Notes under the pieces: model-generated
Databases searched by the model: none
What the model saw: the letters and a program-made list of their open reading frames with translations, nothing else
Told to the model about the DNA's origin: nothing
Program-made: the position numbers and the translations under genes
IMG/VR virus record: IMGVR_UViG_3300010885_025649
Location: 124,001 to 188,000 of that record
DNA length: 64,000 nucleotides
Strand: one strand, 5' to 3'
In this document: piece by piece, positions 18,324 through 44,300 of the stretch
Position numbering within the stretch: the first letter of the stretch is position 1
How the letters are laid out: each line of letters starts with the position of its first letter

Positions 18324-18362
18324 AGTGGACTCCTTGTTTAGGTCGGACGGTAAACAGTTTAT

Positions 18363-19718: not shown

Positions 19719-19869
19719 TACCTAAAGATTATATTCATCTCAGTAAATATACGTAGCCATTTAAAATGAGTTATAAGGTAGTTGATATAAGAGTTGGCAT
19801 GAAGATACCTCACACCGCCGAATAAAGGCCCGGAGGGCAAATACAGGGCGGTGGAGGTATCATCCAGGA

Positions 19870-27356: not shown

Positions 27357-30164
27357 TTAGTCAATGCCTAGGTCAACCACACGGTTATATTCTGCTACAA
27401 CTTGTTTCTCCACCCCAAGGGTCAGAGCCACAAAGTAGAAGAAGCCTAGGTGTTTGATGCTACCTTCTCCTTGTTTAACCTTATCTGCTGTAAGAGCAGT
27501 AAAGTACAGGAGTTGGTCCTCAGAGAAGCCAAGAGTGTAAGCTTGAAGCTTATGCTCAATAGCAACCATGAGCGCACCATAGTTAGCCCCTTGAGACACT
27601 TGATCAAGGAGGATACGGTAGTCCACCTCAATAGCCTTATAGGCAACCCGAACATCTTCATACTCATCAGTGGGCAGAGCTTGACCCATGATCTCCCAGC
27701 GAGAGAGGTTAGAGGTCAAGGTATCCACATCAAGTACAGGATGCTCAGTCAAGTTGGTGAGGGTTGACCACACGTAGTCTGCTACGTGACCATAGCCTAG
27801 AGAACGAATCTCCGCCAAGTGGGGAGACAATTTCTCATAGGTGGTAGCTTCTGCCACAGCCAAAGCCCGTGCTTTGGTAGCAGTAAAGCCTTGATCACGC
27901 AGCTCATTAACCCGATCTACCAGCCCATGATCTTTCCACACTTCCTTAAGGTGGGAAATAGCACTAAGGATTGGGCTGATATCTTTGTAGGGCATTTCAC
28001 CCACGCCACCCAAAGCTTTCCACAACTTAGTAGCTTCAAGACGAAAGGCATGTAAGCTCAAAGAGCTATCAACCGTCTTCTTCATGCTGTTGAGGACCGC
28101 TTGGATGTAACGAGCGAACTTGAACCTGATAGATGGCACCGCGCCTTCAGCACCGCTATCATCACCTTTGGTAAAGGCGGCAATCAGACCTGCACTATGG
28201 TACAGGAACATCAAGGCCTTACCGAGGTTAACAGCGACGCCCACTTTAGCATCCCCTTCTTTGACCACCATAGCCATGACGTTCTTCCACGTAGAGTCTC
28301 CACTATTGGAGTGCTCAGTCTTCGTGGTAAGCGAACCATGGTTGCTGATGCGGGTATCATTTAGGGTAAGGAACTCAGGTAAGATCCCCCCTTCACAATC
28401 CCCGTCAAAGTCACCTTGAATTTGCCCTTGAGTATAGGGAGTCATCAAGAACGCTGTTTGCTCGCCATGATCAATGACCTTTAAGGCCACCCAGCTAAAG
28501 TCAAACAACGCGGGTGCGCGATGGAAGATCATCACAGAACCCAGGGGGTATTTCCCTTTCAGTTCTGCTGGAACAATTACTTCATCATCTTTAATCCCGG
28601 TGTGGGGTAGGATGGGAAGATTGTATCCAGGCAAGCGATGAGTCAACATACGCTTCTTGAAGGCGTTAGTGAACTCGCTTGTGACATCTTCAAGGATGGA
28701 CTTGGCCAGCGGAAGACCAGCAGCTTGCATACGTAAGGCTAAACCTTGCGTACCAAACTGAGAACCGGCCTCATGCTCTTTGGCCAACGTGAGGAACTTG
28801 CCCTCATCCCAGAGCTTAGCCATCGCTTGCACCTCTGCAAGAGAGGATACATGGTAGGCAGCTTTTAACTCAGGGTGGGCAAGAGTATCCATGAAGCGCA
28901 GATCTACCCCAAAGTTCAGAAGAGTCTGACGGGGATTAATCCACACGTTCATGATCAACAGTTCCTCAGGTTTGAGGGTGAGCTGATCCCCGTGCTTGGG
29001 CAAAGCGGCACCTTTTGCGCATTGGGTGAAAGCCTCCACAATAAAGCACAAAGAAGCCTCAGGATTGATCTCACGCGCCGCTGCTACCAAGCGTTTCTGC
29101 TTGTGATCAGTAGGCTTATTGATCATACCTTTGGCATTCAACATGCCGTGGTTAAGGAGAGCCGTACCTTGAGCAGGCGTGCAGGTATGCCCCACAGCCT
29201 CAAAGATTTGCTCATCATCAACCACTAACGCAAAGGGGCCATCCATGCTGACCTTGTATTTAATGCCAAGCTCTTTCGCGCTGACAAATACAATGTTAGC
29301 CAGGGAATGAAACAGGGGCGCACCAGGACGAAGGAGCGTTCTAGCCAGTTTATTAGCTAGGGCTGCATCCTCAGTCTGCTGAGGTTTATCTGTCCACACA
29401 TAGGTCCCAGATGCACCTTTAACCCCTAACAGGTATGGGTGATTAGGGAACGCTGCATGAGCATGCTCAGCAACAGGAGCCATGAAATGCTCTTTGCCTA
29501 CATAGGCTTGAGTCAGTTCCGCGCTTTCGATCTGGTACGTTGAAATAGGCTTGTTGGCCCGCACCGCTTCTGCCTCAGCCTTCTTAACGGCCTCATGATC
29601 TTTGAGGACACTAGCTTTATAATCAAACATGTCAGCGCCCGTAGGACGACCAACTTGTTGAGTAATCAAGCCATTCTCAAACACCATAGGTTTGTACCAT
29701 CCGGCCGCAAATGGGTCAGAGGTTTTAACCTTAGGCAACGGTTTCTGTGGCTGATTGAACGCACCCTTGGTAAAGCTGATGCTATCTTTCCGCGTTACTT
29801 CAGAAGCATGTGCTTCTTTTTCACACGGGAATTTCACATCAGCATAAGCCCGAGGGAAGGGGCGCTCTTGCTGAGTCCATGCGCGCACTACGCCGTTGTG
29901 GAGCTTCTTAACGCTAACAATCTTATCCAGATTACCATCAGCTTCGATCTTATACAAGATCTTAGCGACAGAGCTGAATGCAGACTGCGGCATTTTGAAG
30001 CCGTCAATAAAGAGGATAGGGTTACCCCGATCATCCCGGACGATTTCCACAAGGTGCGACGAGATAGCCTTCTTGTAGAAGAAGTCAATCACGTAGCTGC
30101 GTACAATCTCATCGGTCTCGGAGACCAATTGAATGCGCGCTTTGACGTTCATGGTTTTAGCCAT
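27357..30164 (-). CDS. single-subunit two-barrel RNA polymerase-like protein (RNAP-B, YonO-like)
   Basis: FHRAPALF followed about 33 aa later by IQGDFDGDC (28398-28412); upstream NAKGM and CAKG lysine motifs. Confidence 0.85.
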   Translation of the reverse strand: MAKTMNVKARIQLVSETDEIVRSYVIDFFYKKAISSHLVEIVRDDRGNPILFIDGFKMPQSAFSSVAKILYKIEADGNLDKIVSVKKLHNGVVRAWTQQERPFPRAYADVKFPCEKEAHASEVTRKDSISFTKGAFNQPQKPLPKVKTSDPFAAGWYKPMVFENGLITQQVGRPTGADMFDYKASVLKDHEAVKKAEAEAVRANKPISTYQIESAELTQAYVGKEHFMAPVAEHAHAAFPNHPYLLGVKGASGTYVWTDKPQQTEDAALANKLARTLLRPGAPLFHSLANIVFVSAKELGIKYKVSMDGPFALVVDDEQIFEAVGHTCTPAQGTALLNHGMLNAKGMINKPTDHKQKRLVAAAREINPEASLCFIVEAFTQCAKGAALPKHGDQLTLKPEELLIMNVWINPRQTLLNFGVDLRFMDTLAHPELKAAYHVSSLAEVQAMAKLWDEGKFLTLAKEHEAGSQFGTQGLALRMQAAGLPLAKSILEDVTSEFTNAFKKRMLTHRLPGYNLPILPHTGIKDDEVIVPAELKGKYPLGSVMIFHRAPALFDFSWVALKVIDHGEQTAFLMTPYTQGQIQGDFDGDCEGGILPEFLTLNDTRISNHGSLTTKTEHSNSGDSTWKNVMAMVVKEGDAKVGVAVNLGKALMFLYHSAGLIAAFTKGDDSGAEGAVPSIRFKFARYIQAVLNSMKKTVDSSLSLHAFRLEATKLWKALGGVGEMPYKDISPILSAISHLKEVWKDHGLVDRVNELRDQGFTATKARALAVAEATTYEKLSPHLAEIRSLGYGHVADYVWSTLTNLTEHPVLDVDTLTSNLSRWEIMGQALPTDEYEDVRVAYKAIEVDYRILLDQVSQGANYGALMVAIEHKLQAYTLGFSEDQLLYFTALTADKVKQGEGSIKHLGFFYFVALTLGVEKQVVAEYNRVVDLGID

Positions 30165-30778: not shown

Positions 30779-31044
30779 GGTTTATTCGCTCCTTTAAAGT
30801 AACGGGTTACCACAACCCACACGCCCAGAAGGAGGGGTGCAAATAAAAAGTCGGTAACCAAAAGGAGCAACCACATACACAATAACTATTGAAGCTTATA
30901 CTTGGGTCGTTCTAAGGGGCCGACCAAACCTCCACGGTCAACAGCAATCACCAAACCGAGCTCAACACTGCTAACAACAGTCATGTCTAATCCTCCTTCA
31001 AGAATAGGCAGAGAGAAGGCTCCCTGCCTACAAGTTAAAGGAGT

Positions 31045-31341
31045 TTATTTGGCAACAAATTCCCTGCAACCTCTATCTACACTGTGCGGATTAACCGCAC
31101 ACGACAACGCGGAGCTAAAGCTGTAATACTTACAGCCATAACAAGGCCTTAAAGCCTTTACAATCTCCCAGTCTTCCTCCGAACAGTAGCCTGAGGCTAG
31201 AAAGAAACTAACCTCCTGCTCCGCATACTCAGCTTGACGCTCTTCCTCTTGAGCACAGAGAAGGGCAAGGGCATCAGCCATAATCTCCCCTTGAGATTGA
31301 TCTTTGATTCCCTGTGCTTCAGCGTGTGTGTAGTAACCCAT
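31045..31341 (-). CDS. early protein with C-terminal CxxC..CAVNP..C module
   Basis: PCYGCKYY...SCAVNP...GCREF. Confidence 0.8.
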   Translation of the reverse strand: MGYYTHAEAQGIKDQSQGEIMADALALLCAQEEERQAEYAEQEVSFFLASGYCSEEDWEIVKALRPCYGCKYYSFSSALSCAVNPHSVDRGCREFVAK

Positions 31342-31452
31342 GGTGCATCTCCATTACGCCACAAATCGAGGTGGCTAAATAAAGAGTCGGTATATACAGA
31401 AAGAAAGTCGTTAACTCCTAGGGAAACTAGGATAAGTTAACGACTAGATTAA

Positions 31453-31758
31453 TTAAGCGGTGTAATAGTCAACTACAACCAAATTGCCTTTCAAGAAGGC
31501 AACAAGATCATAGTACTCGCCTTTATTAACATAAATCAAAACCTTCTTAGCCCCAAGAGCCAAGAAAGCTTGAAGCATTTCGCATGCGGTTGCATGTGAG
31601 AGGTTTTTGAACTTGGTGCGATTAGCACCAGTGTTGTAATCTTGCTTAGCCGCACGGAAGCGATTATGCTTGAGGACTAGCACTTGGCGATCCTCCACCT
31701 CTGAAAACGAGATGCAAAAGGTCAACGCTGGGGTGATAACATTATGTTCTTGTAACAT
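31453..31758 (-). CDS. hypothetical early protein
   Basis: Start MLQEH after the conserved leader and GGAG. Confidence 0.75.
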   Translation of the reverse strand: MLQEHNVITPALTFCISFSEVEDRQVLVLKHNRFRAAKQDYNTGANRTKFKNLSHATACEMLQAFLALGAKKVLIYVNKGEYYDLVAFLKGNLVVVDYYTA

Positions 31759-31833
31759 GTGTCTCTCCAATAAGCCGCCTTTAAAAGAGGGCGAACTCAA
31801 ATAAAGAGTCGGGGTTTCCCCCGACTTGTTTAT

Positions 31834-32001
31834 TTAGATCTTACCATTCTTAAGAATGGCCTCCTCCCATTCTTGCATAGCCATCCCGAAGACGATCTCC
31901 TGATCATCTTCAGGCGCAGCAGCGGCTGCTGCATATGCTTTGCACACTAGCATAAATAACAACCACTGCTGAGCAGTGGGAGTTACACAATAAACTCTCA
32001 T
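31834..32001 (-). CDS. 55-aa early protein (not in ORF track)
   Basis: MRVYCVTPTAQQWLLF...NGKI after the conserved leader + GGAG. Confidence 0.7.
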   Translation of the reverse strand: MRVYCVTPTAQQWLLFMLVCKAYAAAAAAPEDDQEIVFGMAMQEWEEAILKNGKI

Positions 32002-32225
32002 GTTCTCTCCAATAAGCCACCTTTAAAAGAGGGTAGCTCAAATAAAGAGTCGCGTTATCACACACAATAATTATGGAACTCTATACTTGGGTCGTTATAG
32101 GTAGGCAACAGCCACACCAACGCTAGCGTTAACCAAACTAAACATGTAACAACTAATCAAAAGCCTGCTCATGATTAACCCTCCAAAGTAAGTGGGAGGA
32201 AGGCCCCCCACTTTAGACAGGTTAA

Positions 32226-32369
32226 TTATTTCTTAGCTGCGGCAGCTTCTTCATCACGCTCATCTTGAAGCCATTGCTCCCAGTAAGCATCCATCTGGAG
32301 CTTATGAATCCACAGATTCCAAGCCAGTGTGTGGTTCACCAACTTGACAATCATCTTCACTTTAGTCAT
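32226..32369 (-). CDS. 47-aa early protein (not in ORF track)
   Basis: MTKVKMIVKL...AAAAKK after leader + GGAG. Confidence 0.65.
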   Translation of the reverse strand: MTKVKMIVKLVNHTLAWNLWIHKLQMDAYWEQWLQDERDEEAAAAKK

Positions 32370-32446
32370 GGTACTCTCCAATGACTCACCTTTAAAAGAG
32401 GGCAAGTCAAAGAAAAGGTCGGGATTTCTCCCAACCTTTTAATCAA

Positions 32447-32869
32447 TTAAACAGTGTAATCACGGCACAAAGTGCCAAACCCTAGGGGGTTTACAGTACA
32501 CGGAAGCCGCCACTCCCCGGTGGCGTATTTACACGCCTCACAGGGATTAGGTTCCTGTTCCGCACACCAACGGTTGTAAGCTTCTACCGCATCTGGCTCA
32601 AGCTGTTCATCTTGAGCAAGGTGGTAGGCCTCCCGGCGCTCTTGCTCCGTCAGCTCCCGCGGGTCTAACCATGCGTCATAAGCGGGAGAGTTCTCCCAAA
32701 GACACATAGCGATTTCTTCCCGAATCGCCCGTTGGCGATCAGTGAGCAGACGAGTTGGAACTCCGACCCAAGGATCTTGCAGCACAGACTGCTTAGCAGC
32801 CCAGCGCTCAAAATCCCAGTGGTTTTGGTTGACCAAAACGATCTTGGTAGCCTGAGTAACTTTAAACAT
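32447..32869 (-). CDS. early protein with C-terminal Cys module
   Basis: MFKVTQ start; CEACKY...PCTVNP...CRDYTV. Confidence 0.8.
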   Translation of the reverse strand: MFKVTQATKIVLVNQNHWDFERWAAKQSVLQDPWVGVPTRLLTDRQRAIREEIAMCLWENSPAYDAWLDPRELTEQERREAYHLAQDEQLEPDAVEAYNRWCAEQEPNPCEACKYATGEWRLPCTVNPLGFGTLCRDYTV

Positions 32870-32973
32870 TTGCGCTCCTTTAATAGTGGAGGACAAATAA
32901 AGAGTCGATAATACTTATCCTAGAAAAGAAGTCGGCAATCCCTAGAGAAACTAGGATAGATTGCCAACTCAAA

Positions 32974-33486
32974 TTACCACTTCATGGTAGCCTTAGACCA
33001 GCCATCCGGAGCTGCATCTAATACTTCCATCAGATCTCCCGCCAGGTGGTAGCTAGCAGGAGAGGGCTTTCCAGAAGGCAAGGTCAGCTTCTGAGGCTCT
33101 TCAGCCTCGAAGTCAACCTGAAGAAATAAACGCACCATTGCATCTATTCCTATAGCTTTGGAAAGCCGAAAGGGAGGTAAGTTGCCCCGGTACGAAACCG
33201 GCGATAGCGTCACGTCAACGCCAATCACACGATTCTCATACTGAAAGACCACATCAGCACCGTATACCCAATCCAGAATGGACCGGGCAGAACAGGTGTT
33301 GATAGGTCTCCCAATGATCCCCTCCAAGCTTTTCAGCTTACGAACACCTAAGAACCGCTGAGCGGTAGCTAGAAGTTCGACTTCGCTTGGACGAGGCCAT
33401 GAGGCAAAGGTAGAGGGATGCAGCTCAATCAAACGAATGAACTGCAACTCAACTACCTTAGGATCGTAATACCCATCTTGGGACAT
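32974..33486 (-). CDS. hypothetical early protein, possible PD-(D/E)XK fold
   Basis: YGADVVF...IGVDVT motif. Confidence 0.6.
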   Translation of the reverse strand: MSQDGYYDPKVVELQFIRLIELHPSTFASWPRPSEVELLATAQRFLGVRKLKSLEGIIGRPINTCSARSILDWVYGADVVFQYENRVIGVDVTLSPVSYRGNLPPFRLSKAIGIDAMVRLFLQVDFEAEEPQKLTLPSGKPSPASYHLAGDLMEVLDAAPDGWSKATMKW

Positions 33487-33619
33487 ACGAGTTCCTCTTG
33501 TATTGTGCCAACTCTTGGACGACCACACCAAGAGTAAGAACTACTGACACAGGATTGTAGGACTCAGAAAGAAAGTCGCTAACTTCTAGGGAAACTAGAA
33601 TAGGTTAGCGACTAATTAA

Positions 33620-33874
33620 TTACGCGTAGTAACGGCAGGAGCTGCCATTAGCACGGGCGGTACGGCCCGCACGATCAAACTTGACGCGGCTTTTGCCGTC
33701 ACGGTTGTTTTTGCTACGGCTAAAGCAGGAACGGCAAGCGCTGGGATTACCCCAGAACCCGCCGTCAAACTTGGCATCGCCTGCCAAGAAGGTTCCGGAA
33801 GCAACGTAATAAAAGAAGGTGTTACCACCTTTCCCGTATACGTAGCTTTCCTCATCGTGAGTAACTTTAAACAT
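33620..33874 (-). CDS. early protein, basic Cys-containing
   Basis: MFKVTH start after AAAGGAG. Confidence 0.7.
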   Translation of the reverse strand: MFKVTHDEESYVYGKGGNTFFYYVASGTFLAGDAKFDGGFWGNPSACRSCFSRSKNNRDGKSRVKFDRAGRTARANGSSCRYYA

Positions 33875-33958
33875 TTGCACTCCTTTAATAGTGGAGAACA
33901 AATAAATAGTCGATATATACAGAAAAGAAGTCGAGGGAAGGCCCCTCAACTTCATTAA

Positions 33959-34531
33959 TTAACGTTTACGCGCCGCCCGAAGGTGGAATACAAAACGACT
34001 GGGTAAACGATAGCGTTCTGTAAGCGGATCACTCAGGACTGAGATCAGAAGATCCCAATCCCTCTTGGGTAGGGAAGCCACCTTAGGCATTATATCAAAT
34101 AACACCCCTGCATCACAAACCCTCCATCTATACCTGATGAAGTTCAGATCTCCATCAAGAAGGTATTCTCTACGCAGGCAAGGTTTTACCTTACCATTGT
34201 AGTAAACAGAGATTACTCCTCCATCCCGGCGAATGCCAAAGTATGCATTTCTCATTTGTATGAGAATGTATACTAAAGCATTAATTAGCATAAAGTGCGC
34301 ATGCACTCGCCCATTATACTTGAAGGGAACTTTAGGCCCCACATCAAATATAATGTCAACATCTGGAAGAAACCCATAGTGGCAGGCTTCCCAAGCCGTG
34401 GCCACCCCGGAGATGGGGAGCCACACCAACACATCCCCTGTAGACAGGGTTACTGTCCGAGTGATTTCAAAATCAAAGGGACACGAAATAAACTGAGCAT
34501 ACTGCTCATTTGAAAGCATGTAGTGTTTCAT
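33959..34531 (-). CDS. hypothetical early protein (paralogue of 35672-36310)
   Basis: Shared C-terminus KR(D/E)(W/Y)D.LI..LS.P...LRAARK. Confidence 0.75.
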   Translation of the reverse strand: MKHYMLSNEQYAQFISCPFDFEITRTVTLSTGDVLVWLPISGVATAWEACHYGFLPDVDIIFDVGPKVPFKYNGRVHAHFMLINALVYILIQMRNAYFGIRRDGGVISVYYNGKVKPCLRREYLLDGDLNFIRYRWRVCDAGVLFDIMPKVASLPKRDWDLLISVLSDPLTERYRLPSRFVFHLRAARKR

Positions 34532-34731
34532 GGCTTTTTAAACTCCCTTTAGAGTACAGGTAACCACACCTGGAGTCCACAAAAGGGATGAACTCAGAAA
34601 AGAAGTCGTAGCTAGCCCCATCATGGCGTTCAGCTACGACTATCTTAGATATACTCTCTCCTATGCGGTTATTGCAGTAGTACGAGAGCTTCTGTTCCCA
34701 GGCTTATTCAGCCCGATGTATAGAGAAACTC

Positions 34732-34926
34732 TTAGCGGATGTAGATCCGTTTCTGAGTTTTCTCTACTGTGCAAGTTGCGCTATTAAACGCAGGATCGCA
34801 CAGGGTATACAACAGTTGATATTCTTGGCGAACATCTTTGTACTGTGTATTACCTACATACACACTATATCCTTGGTACATGACCAAGTGGATAAGTGTG
34901 CTTAGAGAGATTAGTAATGGGTGCAT
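34732..34926 (-). CDS. hypothetical early protein
   Basis: 64 aa with GGAG RBS. Confidence 0.6.
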   Translation of the reverse strand: MHPLLISLSTLIHLVMYQGYSVYVGNTQYKDVRQEYQLLYTLCDPAFNSATCTVEKTQKRIYIR

Positions 34927-35098
34927 TACTAACTCCGTAAGTCCCTCCGAGTAACGTCCTTAGGGGTCTACGTATCCGCTATTAATTCTCTTCGACAAGA
35001 GAACCACAGGTTAAACCCGGAGTTGACGGATAAAGTGCAACTCAAATAAAGAGTCGGAACTTCCTAGGGAAACTAGGATAAAGCTCCGACTATATCAC

Positions 35099-35554
35099 TT
35101 AAACTGTGTAGTCACGACACCCCTGCCCAAAGGCCAGGGGATTTACGCCACAAGGGAGGAGAGCCTCCCCTGTGGCGTATACACAGCCCTTGCAAAGGTT
35201 TTCCGACTCCGGATATGCCGGTGGCGGACTATATAATTGGTATGCCGGGTGAAGGGCAATATTGCCCTCAAATACCGGTGGCAGATCTTGCCACCGGTCC
35301 TCCCACACCCATACCGTTATGTGACATGCCCAGAAGGGCAGTAACGGTATGGCACCGTCTGCATCCTGCACAGGCAGGATGACCATATAATTATTAAATT
35401 GCGGATCCTGATAGTGGATCCGAACGCGGGGAGTTTCCCTCGCCTCAATCTTAGCCGTGCTAAGATTAAGGTTGGCTTGGGCTTTCGCCCGTTTTGCTGC
35501 ATACGCAGCGTATCCGGGAAACGTAGCCAATGTAGCCAGGTTGGTACGTGCCAT
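35099..35554 (-). CDS. early protein with C-terminal Cys module
   Basis: CKGCVYATGE..LPCGVNP...CRDYTV. Confidence 0.8.
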   Translation of the reverse strand: MARTNLATLATFPGYAAYAAKRAKAQANLNLSTAKIEARETPRVRIHYQDPQFNNYMVILPVQDADGAIPLLPFWACHITVWVWEDRWQDLPPVFEGNIALHPAYQLYSPPPAYPESENLCKGCVYATGEALLPCGVNPLAFGQGCRDYTV

Positions 35555-35671
35555 GTGTCTCTCCAATAAGCCGCCTTTAAAAGAGGGCAGCTCAAATAAA
35601 GAGTCGATAATACTTATCCTAGAAAAGAAGTCGGAACTTCCTAGGGAAACTAGGATAAAGCTCCGACTTAG

Positions 35672-36310
35672 TTATGCTTTACGAGCAGCACGAAGGCGCG
35701 CCACTAAATCTTTAGGCACTTGACGACAAGGACCAGACAAGATACCTATCAAGGTATCATACTCTCGCTTTGAAAACGCGTCCATCCCAGCGATTAGCCA
35801 GGACTCTCCATCGGGACGTTCAACCCTCCAACCGGTGTTAACCGGCACTGGGGACCAAGTCCACCAGCTACCATGAGGTAAGGTAGACTTATGCAGCAAG
35901 GCATAAATCTTGTTACCCCGCTCTAAGTAAAGCGTGTTTCCACTAATTTCTAGCCTCAAACTAAACCTGACCAAGATCTTGATCACCGTGGCAAGGTGCC
36001 ACTTATATACGTAAAGCTTAACATTGTAGCGGTTAATCTCCGGTGGCTCAACGGGAGCCAACATTACTGCGGCTACCCAAAGGAGGCAGCGCACCGCTGC
36101 TGGAGGGCAACTTACACCCTCCGCATAGTACGAGCCAGGGGCTAGACACCCCGGAATTTGTGATACCTGTAGGAGAGCGGTATAGCCCTCCTTGGGAATG
36201 AGTAGAATAACTCGACCCATGGTTGTGGGCACGACGGCCCTCACATTAAAGTCAAACATCCCGGTCAGGATGGACGAAACTTTTTCTTCGGTCACGTTTA
36301 CTTTAAACAT
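35672..36310 (-). CDS. hypothetical early protein
   Basis: MFKVN start; paralogue of 33959-34531. Confidence 0.75.
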   Translation of the reverse strand: MFKVNVTEEKVSSILTGMFDFNVRAVVPTTMGRVILLIPKEGYTALLQVSQIPGCLAPGSYYAEGVSCPPAAVRCLLWVAAVMLAPVEPPEINRYNVKLYVYKWHLATVIKILVRFSLRLEISGNTLYLERGNKIYALLHKSTLPHGSWWTWSPVPVNTGWRVERPDGESWLIAGMDAFSKREYDTLIGILSGPCRQVPKDLVARLRAARKA

Positions 36311-36473
36311 CTTGATGTCTCCAATAAGCCGCCTTTAAAAGAGGGCGAACTCAAATAAAGAGTCGATAATACTTATCCTAGAAAAACTGTCGAATGTAGT
36401 GCTAGTACATCCGACAGCTTGGTGGTCAGTTATTTAGATTGTCTATCCTCGCAGACCTACGAGGGTTAATTGG

Positions 36474-36917
36474 TTACGGGCTATCCGCGCATAAATCTTC
36501 AATGATGCTTAATACATCATCAAAGTCCTGTGCAGGAAATACAACCCCTAACGAAGTGATGACAGCCCAATTAAAGCCATCATGTTCGTAGAAGCCGTAC
36601 ACACCCAACTTAAATGTGCCGATAACGACATCTAAGCTAAGTGGTTCCACCACAGGAGGTGCCACAGAATAACCCATAAGTACCTGTCCCCAGATGCCCA
36701 GGTCCGTGGCATAACCCTGAATAGCAGGATTAAGCCCATCGCCATAGGCCCAGTGCAGATGCAGGTCTTCAATAACCTCATGAACGGTAATACGAGTACC
36801 ATCCTTGAAGGCCTTGAATCCCCACACCTCACCTTGTGGGTTATAGATTTGCTCAACAGTAATGTTAAGCTCCTCTACAACCCCAACTGGTGGCAGGAAG
36901 AAATGGAGTTTATCCAT
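36474..36917 (-). CDS. hypothetical acidic early protein
   Basis: MDKLHF start with AAGGAG. Confidence 0.7.
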   Translation of the reverse strand: MDKLHFFLPPVGVVEELNITVEQIYNPQGEVWGFKAFKDGTRITVHEVIEDLHLHWAYGDGLNPAIQGYATDLGIWGQVLMGYSVAPPVVEPLSLDVVIGTFKLGVYGFYEHDGFNWAVITSLGVVFPAQDFDDVLSIIEDLCADSP

Positions 36918-37197
36918 GTTCTCCTTTCTCCCGCGTGCAGATAACCAGCTAGTTATCCTACGTCTTATGGAGTTCAATCAACAAATAAAGAGTCGATAAT
37001 AATTAATCTAGAAAAGAAGTCGCTAACCCCTAGAGACTAGGATAAGTTAGCGACTTAACTTTTAGAAGCTAAAGTACGCGATGATCATCGCTATAATAGC
37101 GATGAACAAAGAACCTTCAGCAATCTTCTTCAACACAGAAATCACCTCCTTAGGTGTGTACCTAAAGAAGAGGTCGGGGTATTCCCCCGACCTACTA

Positions 37198-37746
37198 TTA
37201 ATCTTTACTAAACGTTAAGACACCTCCAGTATCAAGGTAGATACGAAGGATTTCCCAATCGCTTTTATACGATAGGTGTGGAAGGAGTTTTTGAAGATCT
37301 CCTTTCATACCCATACGTATAAGCAAATCTGGGGTTTGGAGCCACGAACTCCAGTTGAGTTGGTTTGTGCAGTGACTAAACCAATCATTATCTAAATTGC
37401 CCGTACGAGCAAGTTGACTGATTTGGGAATCAGTCAAGGTGTAAAACTTCTTATCCCGCGCTTTAAGCGGGACAATGAGTTTCCCGGGTAGAGCATTAGG
37501 CCCCACCTGTGCAGCAACTCTCTGCTGTACCCGGATCTCCCCTAAAGGAGTGCCCACGATTCCCCACCAAAGATGGAACAAATCATGAACAGAAGGTACT
37601 GCTGCCCCCTGTTCAATGTACCACTGACAAAGGGAACCCCCCCCTTGTAGTCTAAATAACTTTATGGGACATTGTTGCTCCGCGTCATCAACGCGGATAA
37701 ACAATAGCGAGCCCATCCGGTGACCACTCTTCTTAGATAATCCCAT
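37198..37746 (-). CDS. hypothetical early protein
   Basis: 182 aa with RBS. Confidence 0.7.
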   Translation of the reverse strand: MGLSKKSGHRMGSLLFIRVDDAEQQCPIKLFRLQGGGSLCQWYIEQGAAVPSVHDLFHLWWGIVGTPLGEIRVQQRVAAQVGPNALPGKLIVPLKARDKKFYTLTDSQISQLARTGNLDNDWFSHCTNQLNWSSWLQTPDLLIRMGMKGDLQKLLPHLSYKSDWEILRIYLDTGGVLTFSKD

Positions 37747-37836
37747 GATCCTCTCCCTGGAGTACCTCTACGAAATTGTAGAGCAGTAGTCCAAGAAAAA
37801 GAGTCGGAGGTTGCTAGCCTCCAACTCTTTATTTAC

Positions 37837-38241
37837 TTATTGCGGTGGGAATTCAAAGAACTCCACGATGGTAGTCAACGGGAGGTGCACCCATTTAGAG
37901 TAATGCACCTCCGTTAACATAACATTTGACGCATAGGGCAGGGTGCCCTCAGTCATGGAGAGTGTAATATGAGGGTGCGTGTTATCGCACACCTCCTGGA
38001 TCTCCTCAGGAAGGAGAACTGACAGGGCTTGCACCCTATCATCGTGGTGTGACAGCATAGCTGTCACAATAAGCTGCTGACCAAGCAGGTGTTGATAGCC
38101 GACGCTATCAACCCCGAACTTGAGCGTGCAATGGAAGTGTTTAGCTTCCACTGGAAACTCGAAGTTCACAGCAGCTTTGACTGCTGCGATGGCCTCAGCA
38201 GTCAAAGAAAGCCAAAGAATTCCCTTTGCCATGTCATTCAC
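37837..38241 (-). CDS. 2H phosphoesterase
   Basis: Two HxT motifs: HCTLKFG and PHITLS. Confidence 0.8.
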   Translation of the reverse strand: MNDMAKGILWLSLTAEAIAAVKAAVNFEFPVEAKHFHCTLKFGVDSVGYQHLLGQQLIVTAMLSHHDDRVQALSVLLPEEIQEVCDNTHPHITLSMTEGTLPYASNVMLTEVHYSKWVHLPLTTIVEFFEFPPQ

Positions 38242-38317
38242 CTGGGGTGTGAAAGATTTGCCCCAGAAAAGAAGTCGGTAATCCCTAGAGAAACTAGGAT
38301 AGATTACCGACAGCTAG

Positions 38318-38665
38318 CTACAGGTAGACCCTGCAGTTAGTCAGGAGTATAGGATACTCCTCTCTTAACCAATCTCGATCCTCCTCTAAAAGAGGGACAG
38401 GATCCTCATTATCAATACGATAATGAGTGGCACGATTGCACACCTCATCACCGTTCATTATATCTTCAACAATGTAACCATCTAAGGTTACAAACTCACT
38501 GTTAAACATGGAGCAAAGCTCCTGTGTAATATAGCTCTTACTCCTAAAAGGAGTAATGGGGCCTAAGTCCCCATTGTTAATTTGATCTCTCTCGACTGTA
38601 TCCCGGGTAACTTTACCCACAGCCAGTAAACAAAACTCATAGGCCTCAGCAGTAAACTTGATCAT
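38318..38665 (-). CDS. hypothetical early protein
   Basis: 115 aa with AAGGAGG RBS. Confidence 0.75.
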   Translation of the reverse strand: MIKFTAEAYEFCLLAVGKVTRDTVERDQINNGDLGPITPFRSKSYITQELCSMFNSEFVTLDGYIVEDIMNGDEVCNRATHYRIDNEDPVPLLEEDRDWLREEYPILLTNCRVYL

Positions 38666-38773
38666 GGTGAACCTCCTTGACAGAGAGGGGAACCACCCCG
38701 AGATCTTTAATAGAGGATCTCAGAAAAAGAGTCGAAGACTATAAGAGGAGGCTCTTACAATCTTCGACTCCAG

Positions 38774-39112
38774 TTAGGCATCATAAACAAGGGTATTACC
38801 CCCAGCTTTCTGAAAGCCTAAACTTAAGAAGGCCAAGCTCCGATGCTCAGCCAAGCCATCCCCCTCATAAGGAATGGCCATTACTTCAACCCCAGCCAAG
38901 GGGCCAGCGGTCCATTGGCTGAAGGTACGACAAAGCCATCGTACAATCCGGACTTTCGTCCTAACTTCAGCACTAACAATAGTATAACTATTATTAATGC
39001 TAAAGCTAATAGACCCCGAGCTTGCAGTCCCACGGAACTCAAGCTCAACGGCAACCCCATCAATTAGGGTTACCGCTTTGATAATGTCTAGTTCCATATT
39101 AGAAACTATCAC
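38774..39112 (-). CDS. early protein, GNAT-like C-terminus (paralogue of 39411-39803)
   Basis: AIPYEGDG...R..F.SLGF. Confidence 0.65.
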   Translation of the reverse strand: MIVSNMELDIIKAVTLIDGVAVELEFRGTASSGSISFSINNSYTIVSAEVRTKVRIVRWLCRTFSQWTAGPLAGVEVMAIPYEGDGLAEHRSLAFLSLGFQKAGGNTLVYDA

Positions 39113-39410
39113 AACAGAAAAAGAGTCGAGGCAGTTGCCCCGACATCTTAGTTAGAATTTCTTACCCGCGCTAACTACGCGGACACCCCTAAAGTCCAGC
39201 CCCAAGCTGGTCTAGGGTGATGAACCCTAGCCTCCAAGCTTGAAGCCAACAGTTGGAAGGGGTGCACTCCTCAACTGTTGTGAACATCTTCACTACCAAC
39301 TGGCGCTCAGCATCAGTCAGTAACAAAGCTAACTGTGGGCACATAAAGAATCACCTCCTTAAGGTTATGCTCACAGAAAAGAAGTCGAAGGGAAGGCCCT
39401 CCAACTTCTT

Positions 39411-39803
39411 TTAGGTGATAAGAAAATAACTATCACCATACTCGGCAAAGCCGAGTGAATCAAGAAATTTGCAGCGGACACTGTGATGGCCATCACCATC
39501 ACAGGGAAACGCGCAAACAATGGTGTTTGCGGGGAGACCCGCGATGTGTGCTTTTACAGCACGGTACGCGGTACGGACCGCGCTTGTTGGGACGACGCTG
39601 TGGTTAGCAGCATTGTAACCAACGGAGCCATTAACATCTGCATCGAGGACGATGCAGCTGACGTAATCATCACCGAAGAAGTCTTCGGTGACGAAGAAGT
39701 TGACGCTAAGCGCGCCAACGGTGATATCAGCATTGAAGCTGACATCAACAGGAGTATTAGATACTCCTGCTTTGAGATTAGTAAGTTGGCGAATGGTATT
39801 CAT
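39411..39803 (-). CDS. early protein, GNAT-like C-terminus
   Basis: AFPCDGDG...R.KFLDSLGF. Confidence 0.7.
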   Translation of the reverse strand: MNTIRQLTNLKAGVSNTPVDVSFNADITVGALSVNFFVTEDFFGDDYVSCIVLDADVNGSVGYNAANHSVVPTSAVRTAYRAVKAHIAGLPANTIVCAFPCDGDGHHSVRCKFLDSLGFAEYGDSYFLIT

Positions 39804-40130
39804 TCCCCCCCTCCTTCTGTTACCCAGATTAGGTAACTCAAATAAAAAGTCGGAGGATACAGAAAGAAAGTCGTTAACTCCTAGGGAAACTAGGATAAGT
39901 TAACGACTAGTCACTTAAGGGCAGCGATAAACGATGCAGATGGCTGCATCGAGAGTAGCCAAATACAGGGCTAATCCAACGTTGACAAGAATCGCGGCGA
40001 GGGCCGCGATTAAAATATCCAATGCGTATTTGCGCATGGTGTCTCCTTGTTACCCAGATTAGGTAACTCAAATAAAAAGTCGGTATATACAGAAAAGAAG
40101 TCGGTAACCAAGGGGTTACCGACTATGAGA

Positions 40131-40337
40131 TTAGAATCCAAGGGCGCTAAGGCCATCTTGGATTGTCTTGAGTCTAGTTGGGGTGGTACGATACCCCCCT
40201 GCTAGACAGACAAGATGAAAATATAAATCTGGGTTTTTTGTACAAAACGGATTTGCCGAGTATACGGTATCCACCGAAGGGGTGAACACGGAAACGGAAA
40301 CGGAAACAATCAAAACAAAACGGATTAACTTTGACAT
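40131..40337 (-). CDS. first early gene, possible signal peptide
   Basis: 68 aa, AAGGAG RBS, behind the outermost conserved box. Confidence 0.65.
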   Translation of the reverse strand: MSKLIRFVLIVSVSVSVFTPSVDTVYSANPFCTKNPDLYFHLVCLAGGYRTTPTRLKTIQDGLSALGF

Positions 40338-40560
40338 TTGAACTCCTTAATAGTGGAGGACAAATAAAGAGTCGAGGCACAGAGGCTCCCAGTGTCAAGG
40401 GTATGAGCTAAAAAATCTAGACGAAAACACATATATGCCGGGGGGGTATAGCAAGTACATATATGGCCTATTCAGAAAATTTCTAATTTTTTGGTGGGAA
40501 GTCGGAATTTCCCGATTCGAATCTGATATGGTTAGAAAGTATACACCGGAGAGTTGCCTT

Positions 40561-41328: not shown

Positions 41329-44300
41329 TCAAGTAGTCATTACAGACATATCATTCCCGGCCACATCTTGGAAGTGGTATTCATATTCCTGATTATTAAT
41401 AGAACTAAGATAAGAAGTCTGATTTAATTCAGAATCATCATATTCATCAATAGAATCAGTAATAGAGACCTCCGCGATATTAAGAACATCAGACTCTCCA
41501 GCAGAGTTAATAAGCTCAAGCCGATATCTTTCAGCTTGGGCTTGTTCATATTCATTCTCAATAGCTTGAGCAGTCAAGGAAGTAACAGGGGATTCTTCTC
41601 TAGTAGCTGTCCGGACAGCCATAGCCGCAGATAACCCCGCGGCAAGCGCACCAAACGCGGCAGTAATAAGTCCGGATCCCATATTAGCAAGACCACGAGA
41701 AGCAAGTTCTCCAACATTAGTACCTTCTTTCCCTATAAATTTAGCAATAGGTGTTGTAATAACATCAGATAGGATAGTACTACCAACAATATTTCCTGCA
41801 AGACCGAGGGCATAGCCCCCTAAGATTTCATGTCGGGTATCACTATCAGACATATCCCTCATAGATTTAACTGCAGAGGTAATATCCGAGGCCATCATAA
41901 AAGCGGATCTCATAGGAGCGAAAGTATTAGAAGACATAAGGCCATGACCAACAGATCTACCTAATTCAGCAGGATCAGTATTAGACTCTCTACCTAAAGC
42001 GCCACCAACAATAGAAGCACCGATAGTAGTAACTGCCAGCATACCATATCCAAGGAATCCCATAGGAGTATTATTAGACATAGCATTTTTAAAGTTTCTA
42101 ATAAGGCCACTAGGAGGATTAATATGTGCGCGCAGTTCATTAGATTGCGCTAATCTAGTAACCATTTCATTAGCTTCATAAGGATTCATTTGTTTAATAT
42201 TATTATGTAAAGCATTAGAGAGATCCACAAGATTTTGATTATGTTCATTAGAATCTGGTGCTGAAGTAGACTCATAAGCAGCTTGTGCAATAAACATCAT
42301 AGTTTCCTTAGCAGTTTGTCCAGAGATACCTAATCTAGAAGCATCACTAATAGCACGATCAATAATAAGTTTTCTACCTACAATTCGTTTAGCCGTTTCA
42401 TAATCAATTACTTTGCTTTGTGGTCCAGCACTAGTAGAATATTCATGAGTATAACTTGCAGTACTGGGGTCAGTACCAATCATACCCGTAGCTCTAATAT
42501 AAGAAACACCATTAACAATTTTACCAGAACCATTAACATAAATTTCCCCTGGGAAAGCTCTAGGACCATGGCTAGAATATTCAAGAATTTTATCAACAGC
42601 ATCACTAAAAGTCTTAGTCTTCATAGTCTCATCAATAGAGGCTCTAAAGCCAGACATAATTTCTTTAATATTTACATTATGTAATTTACCTCTACCAAGG
42701 ATATCAGTAATAGTAGTACCAGCACCTTCACGGCTAGCAAAGTTTACTGATTCCGTAATAAGGGCTTGACCAATATGTGCAGCGGCCAAAGCCAAATCAC
42801 CAATATCAGCTTTACTTTCAGTAGTTAAAGCTTTCTGAACCCCATACATCTTTTGAATATTAAGTAATCCTTTATGCATAAGTTCATTAACTTTATTACG
42901 GGCATCAGGAACAGAAAGGGGATCAAAGTCAATAGAACCCAATCCAGCTTCACCAAAAGGAGCAATAGTATTACTAGTATTAATACGACTAGCCATAAGT
43001 TCACGCTCATTTAAAGTAGAAGTAACAAACTTAAATAGATCATGATACTGGTGTGCTTGTAGAACTCTATTCATAGTATCTTGAAGATCCTTAGTATAAG
43101 TAACAGTACCAGTAGTATCAGTAGCAAAAGCTCTAAGAGCAGCAATATCAGAATTATTCATTGCCGATCTACCCAGACTATCTTCTGCAAGCGTAACCAA
43201 CCGGGTAATCTTCTCACTACTCCCTCCAGTAACTAATTCTTCATCTAAGGTTTGGAATAAGTTAGCCGCAATTCTACGAATAGTTTGCAGTTTAGTATGA
43301 GGAACTTCTTTAGCAAAGTCATGAGCAATTTCATCACTACTAAGAGATCCCACATGTGCTGCAAGAGCACCATAGCTTAAATTTGTAAGGATTTTATTAG
43401 AGATAGATTCTGTAAGTGGAGTACCGGCATTACCTTGGACAGCAGATATATAATCTGCAACAGGATTAAGAAGCCCAGTAGCTTGAACAGCTTGATCAAG
43501 AGCTGCAGGTTGCAACTTAGTTTTAGTAGGCTTGTCTTCATAAGCATTCTCATACAATTGATTTAATGCAGTATACATTTCGCTAGGAGATACTCCGGTA
43601 GCAGCATTAGGTTTAATACCTTCTCTTCCCAGCATTTGCATTTGATAAGCAATACGAGATACAGACTCAATCGTTCTAGCTTTAGCTTTACCCATACTAT
43701 CCGCTTGTAAAAACTCATGACTAAATATATGAGAAGTAGTATCATAAAGCATACCCATATACTTAGTAGCCACTTGAGCAGTTTGTTGAGTAGCAGCCGC
43801 GGCTATATTTTGAGGCATAATAACAGGGAACATTAGTTTAAGGTAACTATTAACAGTTCCTTCATTAGCAGAATACGCAGCCAAATGTTGGCTTAAGGTT
43901 GGATTACCTTGTATAGTATTAAGTTTATCTTCAACAGAAGCAGATTTAAAAGCTGCGGCGCCTGCCGCTCCAAGTTCTGTTGAGACAACAGTTTCAAACT
44001 CAGCACTATGAAAGTGATCAATAATTTTAGTAGTAGATTCATACTGTGCTCTACCAAACTTATTAAGAAGAATAGAGTCTTCAATTGTTTGGGCATTAAG
44101 TCCAGAAAGAACTCTTGATTGACGTTTGAAGGTAGCTAAGATATTAGTATCAGAGGTAACATTTGCTGTTACTTGTTCATGAAGACTAACAATACGTTTA
44201 TCCTCCATAATTCTTTCAGCAGTTTCTTCAGCAGATGTTGGGCCAAGTACACCATAAAGTGCATCATAAGTACTATGAACCGCATCAACTCCTGAAGTAC

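What the first reader, a model, noticed from the sequence alone, without database searches (positions are those of the whole stretch)
31045..36310. Domain and leader shuffling among early cassettes
Seen: three ORFs with unrelated N-termini end in the same CxxCxY..L.C.VNP....CR(D/E)(Y/F) module, two of them ending CRDYTV. Three ORFs begin MFKV(T/N). Two share a ...LRAARK C-terminus. Near-identical leaders recur (TCTCCAATAAGCCGCCTTTAAAAGAGGG at ~31764, 32006, 35560, 36318; TGTTACCCAGATTAGGTAACTC at ~39818, 40048). This is evidence of modular recombination. The Cys module resembles cyanobacterial CAVNP-motif proteins (recollection, unverified) and could be a metal-binding targeting tag.
Basis: partly seen in the sequence, partly recalled or inferred. 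Interest (0 to 1): 0.6.

Follow-up and report, generated by a model that had tools for sequence, protein, structure and literature searches.

The report
Phage gene cassettes with shared parts
A 212-kb freshwater jumbo phage carries a one-way array of about 24 tiny genes separated by repeated terminator, promoter-like and leader units; these units are mixed between unrelated genes, and three of the genes end in a small four-cysteine domain also found in cyanobacteria and many other phages.

Summary

**Setting.** The window is part of a 212,497-bp IMG/VR virus. The finding lies inside a 9.6-kb minus-strand array (window 30,840-40,374) of about 24 small orphan genes. A 14-nt core, CGACTYYTTWYYTR, occurs 27 times there, against 1.4 expected, and nowhere else in the genome.

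**Junctions.** Most junctions have a covarying hairpin ending in CGACT plus a pyrimidine tail. Thirteen carry the form CGACTCTTTATTTG, mostly followed by one of three recurring leader types. This matches the composite terminator/promoter "PeSL" cassettes of T4-type phages, but without sigma-70 boxes.

**The shuffling claim is only partly right.**
- Regulatory blocks are assorted across unrelated genes, with sharp edges.
- MFKVT is the tail of one leader repeat.
- The LRAARK pair are full-length diverged paralogs, so that pair is plain duplication.
- The three Cys-module genes share only their last 31-36 residues. That is an old domain fusion (70% nucleotide identity), not recent shuffling.

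**The module.** It recurs in about 50 other protein clusters with about 30 unrelated partner regions. It matches only the C-terminal part of Pfam DUF6464, below threshold. Promoter and terminator roles and zinc binding are inferred, not shown.

The parts
30840..40374 (-). The whole one-directional array: about 24 small ORFs with composite intergenic units. It holds all 27 minus-strand copies of the 14-nt core CGACTYYTTWYYTR.
   Evidence: The core is found nowhere else in the 212-kb genome. Terminator-like sites number 40 against 11.6 +/- 3.1 expected, while sigma-70-like sites are not enriched (11 against 16.2).
31045..31341 (-). 98-aa ORF. The four-Cys module is its last ~32 aa (31057-31143). 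It has its own leader type, a hairpin, behind a core at 31376-31389.
   Evidence: Pfam DUF6464 scores 15.3 bits (E 0.036) over profile positions 76-102 only.
32447..32869 (-). 140-aa ORF that starts MFKVT and ends in the Cys module (32456-32542) and CRDYTV. Its leader is type L2.
35099..35554 (-). 151-aa ORF that ends in the Cys module (35108-35194) and CRDYTV. Its leader is type L1.
   Evidence: Its N-terminal 116 aa have no relative in the genome or among the module proteins.
33620..33874 (-). 84-aa ORF that starts MFKVT. It shares core, L2 leader and the first 5-6 codons with 32447-32869, and nothing after that.
   Evidence: The repeat 32853-32910 / 33858-33915 is 95% identical over 58 nt. 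BLASTP finds no further similarity.
33959..34531 (-). 190-aa ORF ending LRAARKR. It is a full-length paralog of 35672-36310.
   Evidence: a colinear alignment, residues 6-189 against 6-211, 20% identity, E 3e-6.
35672..36310 (-). 212-aa ORF that starts MFKVN and ends LRAARKA. Its leader is type L1.
   Evidence: The word-index search finds only the protein itself.
36311..36365 (-). Core plus L1 leader. The reference copy has an 8-bp hairpin with an invariant 10-nt loop CUCUUUUAAA, then a free GGAG. Other copies lie at 35555-35606, 32002-32052, 31759-31811 and 32370-32421 (diverged).
   Evidence: Covariation: all cells pair and 3 of 8 pairs show compensatory change among 5 copies; slid controls pair at 19-60%.
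32867..32907 (-). Core plus L2 leader. Its hairpin pairs the core's AUUUG with CAAAU(G) and CUCC with GGAG, which buries the ribosome-binding site and the start codon. Other copies lie at 33872-33912 and 40335-40374.
   Evidence: folding energy -8.8 to -9.9 kcal/mol, z-score -2.8 to -4.0.
39818..39852 (-). Core plus L3 leader (hairpin GUUACC...GGUAAC). A second copy lies at 40048-40082.
31397..31445 (-). Long hairpin H1 plus pyrimidine tail, terminator-like. Eight copies in all; the others lie at 32921-32969, 33565-33613, 35043-35091, 35620-35668, 37009-37055, 38264-38312 and 39860-39908.
   Evidence: a 16-bp stem. The outer AGUCG/CGACU and inner CCUAG/CUAGG pairs are (nearly) invariant, and the six middle pairs show compensatory changes.
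27357..30164 (-). 935-aa ORF directly behind the last cassette, with a 38-nt gap and no hairpin. It carries QGDFDGD at residue 585 and is a candidate phage RNA polymerase of the two-barrel kind.
   Evidence: This is weak: PDB phmmer E 0.039 to the Pol V largest subunit at the motif, and language-model neighbours are phage 'RdRP' PF05183 clusters at score 0.90.
41329..50895 (-). 3188-aa ORF upstream on the same strand, with QGDYDGD at residue 2135. It is a candidate virion-packaged RNA polymerase, judged by motif and size only.
   Evidence: No family match was found.

Best explanation
The finding sits in a 9.6-kb, one-directional array of about 24 small orphan genes in a freshwater jumbo phage. 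The genes are wired together by composite regulatory units of the PeSL type.

**Anatomy of a junction.**
- Most junctions have a hairpin whose 3' arm ends in CGACT, followed by a pyrimidine-rich tail. I read this as a terminator or attenuator.
- Thirteen junctions also carry, or fuse to, the form CGACTCTTTATTTG. I read this as a phage-specific promoter-like core, because the first cassette has it without any hairpin or upstream gene.
- This core is mostly followed by one of three recurring leader types; the rest have their own leaders. L1 is a hairpin with an invariant loop. L2 buries the ribosome-binding site and start codon. L3 is a plain hairpin.

**Why the parts are shared.** The units are up to 100% identical over 48 nt. 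That makes them substrates for homologous recombination or gene conversion. This explains why the same leader, and in one case the first five codons (MFKVT), is attached to unrelated genes.

**The coding similarities have two other origins.**
- The LRAARK pair is an old whole-gene duplication.
- The Cys module is an old, independently folding domain of about 32 aa with four invariant cysteines. It equals the C-terminal part of DUF6464 and is fused here to three unrelated N-terminal regions. It most likely binds zinc and serves as a protein-contact module.

**Shown:** the anatomy, the repeat statistics, the hairpin covariation, the paralogy, and the module's spread.

**Inferred:** the promoter and terminator roles, early timing, recombination as the process, zinc binding, and which polymerase reads the array.
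For: **Core and hairpins.**
- The core has 27 minus-strand copies against 1.37 expected, confined to 30,840-40,374 within 212 kb.
- Terminator-like sites are enriched 3.4-fold, while sigma-70-like sites are not.
- The H1 stem has seven pairs with compensatory change; its outer stem and inner stem are conserved. The L1 stem has three compensatory pairs in five copies. L2 folding has z-scores of -2.8 to -4.0.

**Sharp-edged repeats between unrelated flanks.**
- 31764/36318 are 100% identical over 48 nt.
- 35560/36318 are 93% identical over 75 nt.
- 31377/39840 are 94% identical over 71 nt, and are followed by different leaders.
- 32853/33858 are 95% identical over 58 nt, running into codon 6.

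**Coding parts.**
- ATGTTTAAAGT is unique to the three MFKV starts.
- The LRAARK pair is colinear at E 3e-6.
- The module has 53 further hits in 1.84 billion representatives. Four Cys and one Pro are invariant in 45 aligned copies. Thirty-six copies are C-terminal, six N-terminal and three internal. The partner regions fall into 30 sequence clusters.
- Nine of the 56 hits match DUF6464, and in the hits examined the match covers only the profile's C-terminal part (about positions 60-104).
- A separate 9.4-kb metagenome contig (L016) has 13 terminator-plus-conserved-motif-plus-ribosome-binding-site junctions and three module genes.

**Published analogues.** PeSLs are described in PMC2839356 and PMC4122927. 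Conserved-motif promoters and terminators for a virion polymerase, in a polymerase cascade, are described in bioRxiv 10.1101/2022.12.01.518664.
Against: - No transcript data exist. No RNA run holds the phage, so the promoter, terminator and timing are all unproven.
- Ten junctions have only the hairpin form of the core. Either that form also initiates transcription, or those genes depend on read-through.
- The only second genome is 99.96% identical and has no cassette gain or loss. No recombination event has therefore been caught in the act.
- The joint 31763-to-36318 seen in run X2 lies on the 48-nt exact repeat at about 2.7x depth. It may be an assembler artefact.
- The module model is weak (pLDDT 65.7) and has no structural match.
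- The polymerase assignments rest on a five-residue motif plus marginal scores. Pfam, PHROGs and NCBIfam find nothing.
Confidence: 0.6

Rival explanations
1. There was only duplication and divergence. The array grew by tandem duplication of whole cassettes. The orphan coding parts then diverged beyond recognition. Selection kept the regulatory units, the first codons and the Cys module alike. No exchange between cassettes is needed.
For: The LRAARK pair and the pair 38774/39411 are plain diverged paralogs. In contig L016 the three module genes are full-length paralogs at 33-36% identity. The window's module copies are old, at 70% nucleotide identity.
Against: - 48 nt are 100% identical, 4.5 kb apart, while the adjoining genes show no similarity at all. 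Selection on function does not keep every base, whereas conversion or recent exchange does.
- The combinations do not match. The same hairpin-plus-core block is joined to leader L3 at 39.8 kb and to another leader at 31.4 kb. L3 follows a different hairpin at 40.1 kb. The Cys genes use three different leaders.
- Across phages the module sits at either end of proteins and beside 30 unrelated partner regions.
Confidence: 0.2
2. The repeats are RNA-level signals in one long operon. The host polymerase starts once upstream, for example near the TTGACA at 40393-40398. The hairpin-plus-core units would then be processing or stability sites for an endoribonuclease, and the L1 and L2 leaders would be operators for a translational repressor. 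They would not be promoters or terminators.
For: - The outer stem AGUCG/CGACU and the inner stem CCUAG/CUAGG with its loop are sequence-conserved, while the middle of the stem only covaries. That pattern looks like a protein-binding RNA.
- The L1 loop is invariant, and L2 hides the start codon.
- Ten junctions lack the CTTTATTTG form of the core.
- Four junctions hold TATTAT, a fair -10 box, at a workable distance from a GAC-containing hexamer. The scan lists one of these, at 36393-36366.
Against: - Sigma-70-like sites are not enriched (11 against 16.2).
- The first cassette has the core with no hairpin and no upstream gene, where a processing site would serve little purpose.
- Two large proteins with a polymerase-like DxDGD motif flank the array.
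- Phage P23-45 shows that a virion polymerase can use conserved-motif promoters and terminators.
Confidence: 0.15

Closest known systems
PeSL (promoter-early stem-loop) cassettes of T4-type phages (Arbiol et al. 2010, PMC2839356; Comeau et al. 2014, PMC4122927)
   Same: Both are repeated composite intergenic units that run from the stop codon of one gene to the start codon of the next. Both contain a stem-loop terminator or attenuator, a promoter element that can overlap the stem, and a ribosome-binding site. Both are concentrated in regions of small orphan genes and act as points of exchange between otherwise unrelated sequences.
   Different: Here the conserved element is a 14-nt core, CGACTYYTTWYYTR, and not sigma-70 -35/-10 boxes, which are not enriched. 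There are also distinct structured leader classes. The phage is not T4-like: its portal matches the Mu portal family. Exchange between relatives or mini-circles could not be shown.
Virion-to-non-virion RNA polymerase cascade of Thermus phage P23-45 (bioRxiv 10.1101/2022.12.01.518664); also crAss-like gp66 and SPbeta YonO
   Same: P23-45 has a giant virion protein carrying a two-barrel polymerase. That polymerase reads a short block of pre-early genes, which includes the gene for a second phage polymerase. It uses its own promoter motif and terminators with a conserved 26-nt motif. Here a 3188-aa DYDGD protein gene, the array, and then a 935-aa DFDGD protein gene lie in a row on one strand.
   Different: Polymerase identity here rests on the motif, a PDB hit at E 0.039, and language-model neighbours at 0.90. 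There is no family match, no usable model, and no transcript data.
Pfam DUF6464 (PF20065), an uncharacterised family that rings in Synechococcus elongatus among the control genomes
   Same: It shares the C-terminal four-Cys stretch with the LPCAVNP core, at profile positions about 75-104.
   Different: The N-terminal ~70 profile positions are absent from all three window proteins. Scores are 15.3 bits or nothing, against a cut-off of 25. Most module proteins (47 of 56) do not match the family at all.
Morons, meaning a single gene with its own promoter and terminator (established phage-genomics concept; from my own knowledge)
   Same: Many cassettes here are single genes bracketed by a promoter-like core and a hairpin.
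   Different: Morons are scattered insertions in late operons of temperate phages and are read by the host polymerase. Here the units form a dense array with a common, phage-specific motif.

Membership tests
Pfam DUF6464 (PF20065) | Whole-protein score at or above the gathering cut-off of 25 bits | tested here: not met
   31045-31341 scores 15.3 bits (E 0.036). The other two give no hit at E 0.1. The six-frame search of the genome gives 13.8 bits.
Pfam DUF6464 (PF20065) | C-terminal four-Cys stretch with the LPCAVNP core (profile positions ~75-104) | tested here: met
   Alignments cover profile positions 75-104 in the window protein and in relatives found by the module profile.
Pfam DUF6464 (PF20065) | N-terminal ~70 positions of the profile | tested here: not met
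   No window protein aligns there. Among the hits only P0022 reaches back to position 60, at 25.1 bits.
PeSL composite terminator/promoter cassettes | An intergenic stem-loop joined to a promoter element and ribosome-binding site, repeated many times among orphan genes | tested here: met
   Stems are supported by covariation. There are 27 core copies, and 40 terminator-like sites against 11.6 expected.
PeSL composite terminator/promoter cassettes | The promoter part matches the host sigma-70 consensus | tested here: not met
   Sigma-70-like sites number 11 against 16.2 +/- 4.1 in shuffles. Only four junctions hold a TATTAT box.
PeSL composite terminator/promoter cassettes | Recombination between units causes gene gain, loss or replacement between close relatives, or makes mini-circles | tested here: inconclusive
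   The only relative is 99.96% identical with no gaps. The joints in Logan contigs lie on exact repeats at low depth. Within the genome, the block combinations do not match.
PeSL composite terminator/promoter cassettes | Promoter and terminator activity | not testable with these tools
   No RNA run holds the phage.
Two-barrel RNA polymerases (YonO / crAss gp66 / P23-45 gp64, gp96) | Catalytic DxDGD motif | tested here: met
   QGDFDGD (935 aa, residue 585), QGDYDGD (3188 aa, residue 2135) and AADFDGD (1171 aa, residue 882).
Two-barrel RNA polymerases (YonO / crAss gp66 / P23-45 gp64, gp96) | Sequence-family or fold match to a double-psi beta-barrel polymerase | tested here: inconclusive
   PF05183 gives no hit in the genome. 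Pfam, PHROGs and NCBIfam find nothing. PDB phmmer gives E 0.039 for the 935-aa protein only. Atlas features give 0.90 to PF05183 clusters. The AF2 model has pLDDT 37 and is unusable.
Zinc-binding mini-domain (zinc knuckle/ribbon kind) | Four invariant metal-ligand residues at fixed spacing | tested here: met
   The four Cys are invariant in 45 aligned copies. The spacing is C-x2-C-x10-C, then a final loop of variable length (about 9-15 residues) before the last C.
Zinc-binding mini-domain (zinc knuckle/ribbon kind) | Metal bound, with a known zinc fold | tested here: inconclusive
   The AF2 model has pLDDT 65.7 and two short strands. Foldseek finds no PDB match and there is no PDB sequence match. 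Metal content cannot be tested here.

The most novel reading that the evidence does not exclude
The 14-nt core with its sequence-conserved hairpin would be the promoter/terminator code of a new two-barrel virion RNA polymerase, the 3188-aa protein, in a jumbo cyanophage. This polymerase would read a 'pre-early' regulon that ends in the gene for a second phage polymerase (935 aa), with a third DxDGD protein (1171 aa) further on. The leader classes would set three translational sub-programmes. The Cys module would be a cyanobacterium-derived zinc adaptor that docks different takeover proteins onto one host target.
Probability: 0.2. Interest if true: 0.75.

Novelty: new variant of a known kind. 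Interest (0 to 1): 0.5.

Why it matters
- **Wider reach of a known mechanism.** PeSL-type cassettes would not be a T4 peculiarity. An unrelated jumbo phage, and other metagenomic phages such as L016, would build orphan-gene arrays the same way, each with its own motif. That would give a general route by which phages swap regulatory parts and try out new genes.
- **A candidate promoter code.** The core motif is a ready-made candidate code for an uncharacterised phage transcription system.
- **A new domain family.** The Cys module is small, widespread and undescribed. Pfam captures only its overlap with DUF6464. It links cyanobacterial cell proteins to phage takeover genes and offers a handle for finding the host target.

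Tried and rejected
**Searches that found nothing.**
- Megablast of the array against 50,697 phage records gave no match.
- Word-index protein searches with the 98-aa, 935-aa and 212-aa proteins found only the proteins themselves. This tool sees only proteins 0.55-1.75 times the query length, so fusions and fragments are not excluded.
- PHROGs and Pfam on nearly all cassette proteins gave nothing at threshold.
- Rfam with permissive E-values gave nothing credible.
- Literature searches for 'DUF6464' and 'CAVNP' turned up nothing relevant.
- psbA was not found in the genome and there are no tRNAs in the window. The cyanobacterial host is therefore inferred only from the module's relatives.

**Structure attempts.**
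- The module profile found nothing in PDB sequences.
- The module's AF2 model has pLDDT 65.7, and Foldseek found no match in PDB.
- The Atlas look-up for the 151-aa protein was uninformative.
- The single-sequence AF2 model of the 935-aa protein has pLDDT 37.4 and was not searched further.

**Scans of larger collections.**
- A degenerate DNA pattern in 185,579 prokaryote genomes gave three high-GC hits with no module; I take them as chance.
- The same kind of scan in IMG/VR gave three or four other viral contigs with a module.
- The major capsid protein found only the same phage.

**Ideas rejected or left open.**
- A chimeric assembly at the GC-rich island is rejected, because both junctions recur in an independent contig.
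- I considered a T7-like polymerase because CGACTC equals T7 promoter positions -12 to -7 (my own knowledge). PF00940 gave no hit, but its control rang nowhere, so this is uninformative. I treat the 6-nt match as chance.
- No RNA runs hold the phage.
- Logan contigs break at the repeats. Their joints at exact repeats at 2-3x depth are not evidence of recombinants.

Full report
**Where the finding lies.** The window is bases 124,001-188,000 of a 212,497-bp IMG/VR virus record that CheckV rates 91% complete.
- A Mu-type portal, a major head protein and other virion genes lie at 51.9-62.6 kb on the plus strand.
- The finding sits in a GC-rich island, about 47% GC against about 35% elsewhere, spanning window ~12,000-40,400.
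- A 155-kb contig from another sample is 99.96% identical over 22.8 kb. It reproduces both edges of the island, so the island is not an assembly chimera.
- DNA runs that hold the phage are freshwater metagenomes, and no RNA run holds it.

- Three minus-strand ORFs (31045-31341, 32447-32869, 35099-35554) end in the same four-Cys motif. A regex over all six frames of the genome finds only these three copies.
- Three ORFs begin MFKV. The 11-mer ATGTTTAAAGT occurs three times in 212 kb, only at these starts, where about 6e-4 are expected.
- Two ORFs end LRAARK.
- The quoted leaders are repeats: 31764 and 36318 are 100% identical over 48 nt, 35560 is 96%, 32006 is 88%, and there is a fifth diverged copy at 32375. 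The pair 39818/40048 is 90% identical over 61 nt.

**What the region is.** Read on the minus strand from 40,374 down to 30,840, there are about 24 small ORFs with good ribosome-binding sites, including peptides of 24-40 aa.
- A 14-nt core, CGACTYYTTWYYTR, occurs 27 times on this strand against 1.37 +/- 1.31 expected. It occurs nowhere else in the genome, apart from one looser match inside the 3188-aa gene.
- In one form (tail like TCTTTTCTG) the CGACT is the 3' arm of a hairpin placed just after a stop codon.
- Eight of these hairpins are a long type with a 16-bp stem. The outer AGUCG/CGACU pairs and the inner CCUAG/CUAGG pairs are conserved, and the middle pairs change in a compensatory way.
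- Terminator-like sites are 3.4-fold enriched, 40 against 11.6 +/- 3.1. Sigma-70-like sites are not enriched, 11 against 16.2.
- In the other form (CGACTCTTTATTTG, 13 copies counting variants) the core stands 7-13 nt after the first form, or is fused to a hairpin, or stands alone. It is followed directly by a leader and a gene.
- The first cassette, next to the divergent LOV gene, has this second form with no hairpin and no upstream gene. For that reason I read it as promoter-like.

**Leaders.** There are three recurring leader types.
- L1 has five copies: an 8-bp stem with three compensatory pairs, an invariant 10-nt loop, then a free GGAG.
- L2 has three copies and one variant. It pairs the end of the core with CAAAU(G), and CUCC with GGAG, so the ribosome-binding site and start codon are buried. 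Its z-scores are -2.8 to -4.0.
- L3 has two copies and forms a plain hairpin.
- No Rfam family matches.

**Is there shuffling?** For the regulatory parts, yes, in the sense of mosaicism.
- Blocks end sharply between unrelated flanks.
- The hairpin-plus-core block at 31377-31447 is 94% identical to the one at 39840-39910, but the two are followed by different leaders.
- L3 follows a different hairpin at 40.1 kb.
- The three Cys-module genes use three different leaders. The two LRAARK paralogs use L1 and a unique leader.
- MFKVT is explained by this mosaicism. The L2 repeat 32853-32910 / 33858-33915 (95% over 58 nt) runs 16 nt into the coding sequence and then stops.
- The first cassette's start (MSKLI) is the same stretch with an indel, 89% over 55 nt.
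- The third MFKV gene has an L1 leader but the same 11-mer at its start, which suggests a hybrid junction. This last point is inference.

**Where shuffling is not the answer.**
- The LRAARK pair aligns colinearly from residue 6 to the end, at 20% identity and E 3e-6. That is an old whole-gene duplication, as is the pair 38774/39411.
- The three Cys genes share only their last 31-36 residues, or 70 residues for one pair. Their N-terminal parts match nothing in each other, in the genome, or in other module proteins.
- The module DNA is only 70% identical between 32447 and 35099.
- The window's modules are as close to a copy in another phage contig (61-64%) as to each other (64%).
- This is therefore an old fusion of a mobile domain, not recent exchange inside this array.

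**The Cys module.** I searched a three-sequence profile against 1.84 billion representative proteins. It gave 56 hits at E <= 1e-3, of which three are the window's own proteins.
- The consensus is CxxCx[YW]x[TS]GExxLPC[AT]VNP, then a loop of 5-11 residues, then Cx[DE][YF]E.
- Four Cys and one Pro are invariant in 45 aligned copies.
- Thirty-six copies are C-terminal, six are N-terminal and three are internal. The non-module parts fall into 30 sequence clusters.
- Nine hits match Pfam DUF6464, and in those examined the match covers only the profile's C-terminal part (about positions 60-104). The window's best score is 15.3 bits against a cut-off of 25.
- DUF6464 rings in Synechococcus elongatus among the control genomes.
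- One hit (P0013) is a chromosomal gene in a Synechococcales MAG. Its neighbours encode HetZ-family, GGDEF/EAL and MOSC proteins.
- Other hits sit in phage-like arrays of unnamed small genes.
- Contig L016 has 13 junctions made of a hairpin, a T-run, a conserved ~29-nt motif and a ribosome-binding site. It has three module genes that are full-length paralogs of each other.
- No solved structure matches by sequence. The AF2 model is weak, at pLDDT 65.7, and finds nothing in PDB.
- Zinc binding and a protein-contact role are inferences from the four invariant Cys, the conserved non-Cys surface positions, and the lack of net positive charge.

**Surroundings and mechanism.** The array is flanked on the same strand by two large genes.
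- Upstream is a 3188-aa ORF carrying QGDYDGD.
- Directly after the last cassette, with a 38-nt gap and no hairpin, is a 935-aa ORF carrying QGDFDGD.
- A 1171-aa ORF further on carries AADFDGD.
- DxDGD is the catalytic motif of two-barrel RNA polymerases.
- Support beyond the motif is thin. There is a PDB hit at E 0.039 to the Pol V largest subunit at the motif. Language-model neighbours are phage 'RdRP' PF05183 clusters at 0.90. No family match was found and the model is unusable.
- The layout recalls phage P23-45. There a virion polymerase reads pre-early genes that include a second polymerase gene, using its own promoter motif and terminators with a conserved motif.
- I therefore think the core is read by a phage polymerase, but this is inference.

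**Comparison with what is known.** The closest described system is the PeSL of T4-type phages. PeSLs are composite stem-loop/promoter/ribosome-binding-site units between orphan genes, and they serve as exchange points.
- The present units share that anatomy and setting.
- They differ in lacking sigma-70 boxes, in having a private 14-nt core and structured leader classes, and in sitting in an unrelated jumbo phage.
- Exchange between relatives could not be shown. The only relative has no indels, and the contig joints at exact repeats are ambiguous.

**Verdict.** I class it as a new variant of a known kind, with moderate interest.

Noticed in passing
window ~12,000-40,400: A 28-kb island at about 47% GC sits in a genome of about 35% GC. 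Both of its edges recur in an independent contig, so it is real. It holds the array, the 935-aa gene and the 1171-aa gene. The 3188-aa gene just outside is at 37% GC.
   Followed up: partly
window 41329-50895 (-), 27357-30164 (-), 13343-16858 (-): Three large orphan proteins each carry an RNA-polymerase-like DxDGD motif: QGDYDGD, QGDFDGD and AADFDGD. They show no significant similarity to each other away from the motif.
   Followed up: partly
window 40435-41304 (+): A 289-aa protein has a LOV-type PAS domain (PAS_9, E 5.6e-22, with NCRFLQG), a coiled-coil region and a C-terminal hydrophobic tail. It is low in GC and is transcribed away from the first cassette.
   Followed up: no
window 37837-38232 (-): A cassette protein has two HxT motifs (HCTL and HITL). 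It gives sub-threshold hits to 2H phosphoesterases: tRNA_lig_CPD at E 8.5e-4, the anti-CBASS protein Acb1 at E 0.0025, and the PHROG 'RNA ligase' family at E 7.8e-4. It may be an anti-defence enzyme.
   Followed up: partly
window 37062-37136, 39915-40037, 32095-32172, 30886-30984 (all -): Very small ORFs of 24-40 aa each have a strong ribosome-binding site inside the array. Three of them are hydrophobic, membrane-peptide-like. They are easy to miss in annotation.
   Followed up: partly
window 38774-39097 and 39411-39803 (-): This is another diverged paralog pair within the array: 32% identity over 73 aa, E 8e-8.
   Followed up: yes
window 30874-30914 and 32059-32099: A 41-nt repeat, 83% identical, lies at the end of two tiny ORFs and just before a core copy. 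It is a further shared junction element of unknown role.
   Followed up: no
window 18,323-19,870: A gap of about 1.5 kb has no long ORF and holds several short direct repeats, for example 18846/18899 (23 nt, 100%), 18568/18642 (18 nt, 100%) and 18660/18869. It may be an origin or another regulatory region.
   Followed up: no
L016:2083-8827: An unrelated 9.4-kb metagenome contig has 13 junctions of hairpin, T-run, a conserved ~29-nt motif and a ribosome-binding site. Besides its three module paralogs, two neighbouring genes (5368 and 6105) share their first 100 aa at 49.5% identity but have different C-terminal parts.
   Followed up: partly
window 31763 / 36318, run X2: One 165-nt Logan contig joins 31667-31763 to the far side of the 48-nt exact repeat at 36318. 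That would delete 4,554 bp. It is either a real recombinant or an assembler path at 2.7x depth, and the two cannot be told apart here.
   Followed up: partly
window 30203-30778 (-): A 191-aa protein rich in Ala, Lys and Val lies between the last core copy and the 935-aa gene. It matches no family.
   Followed up: no
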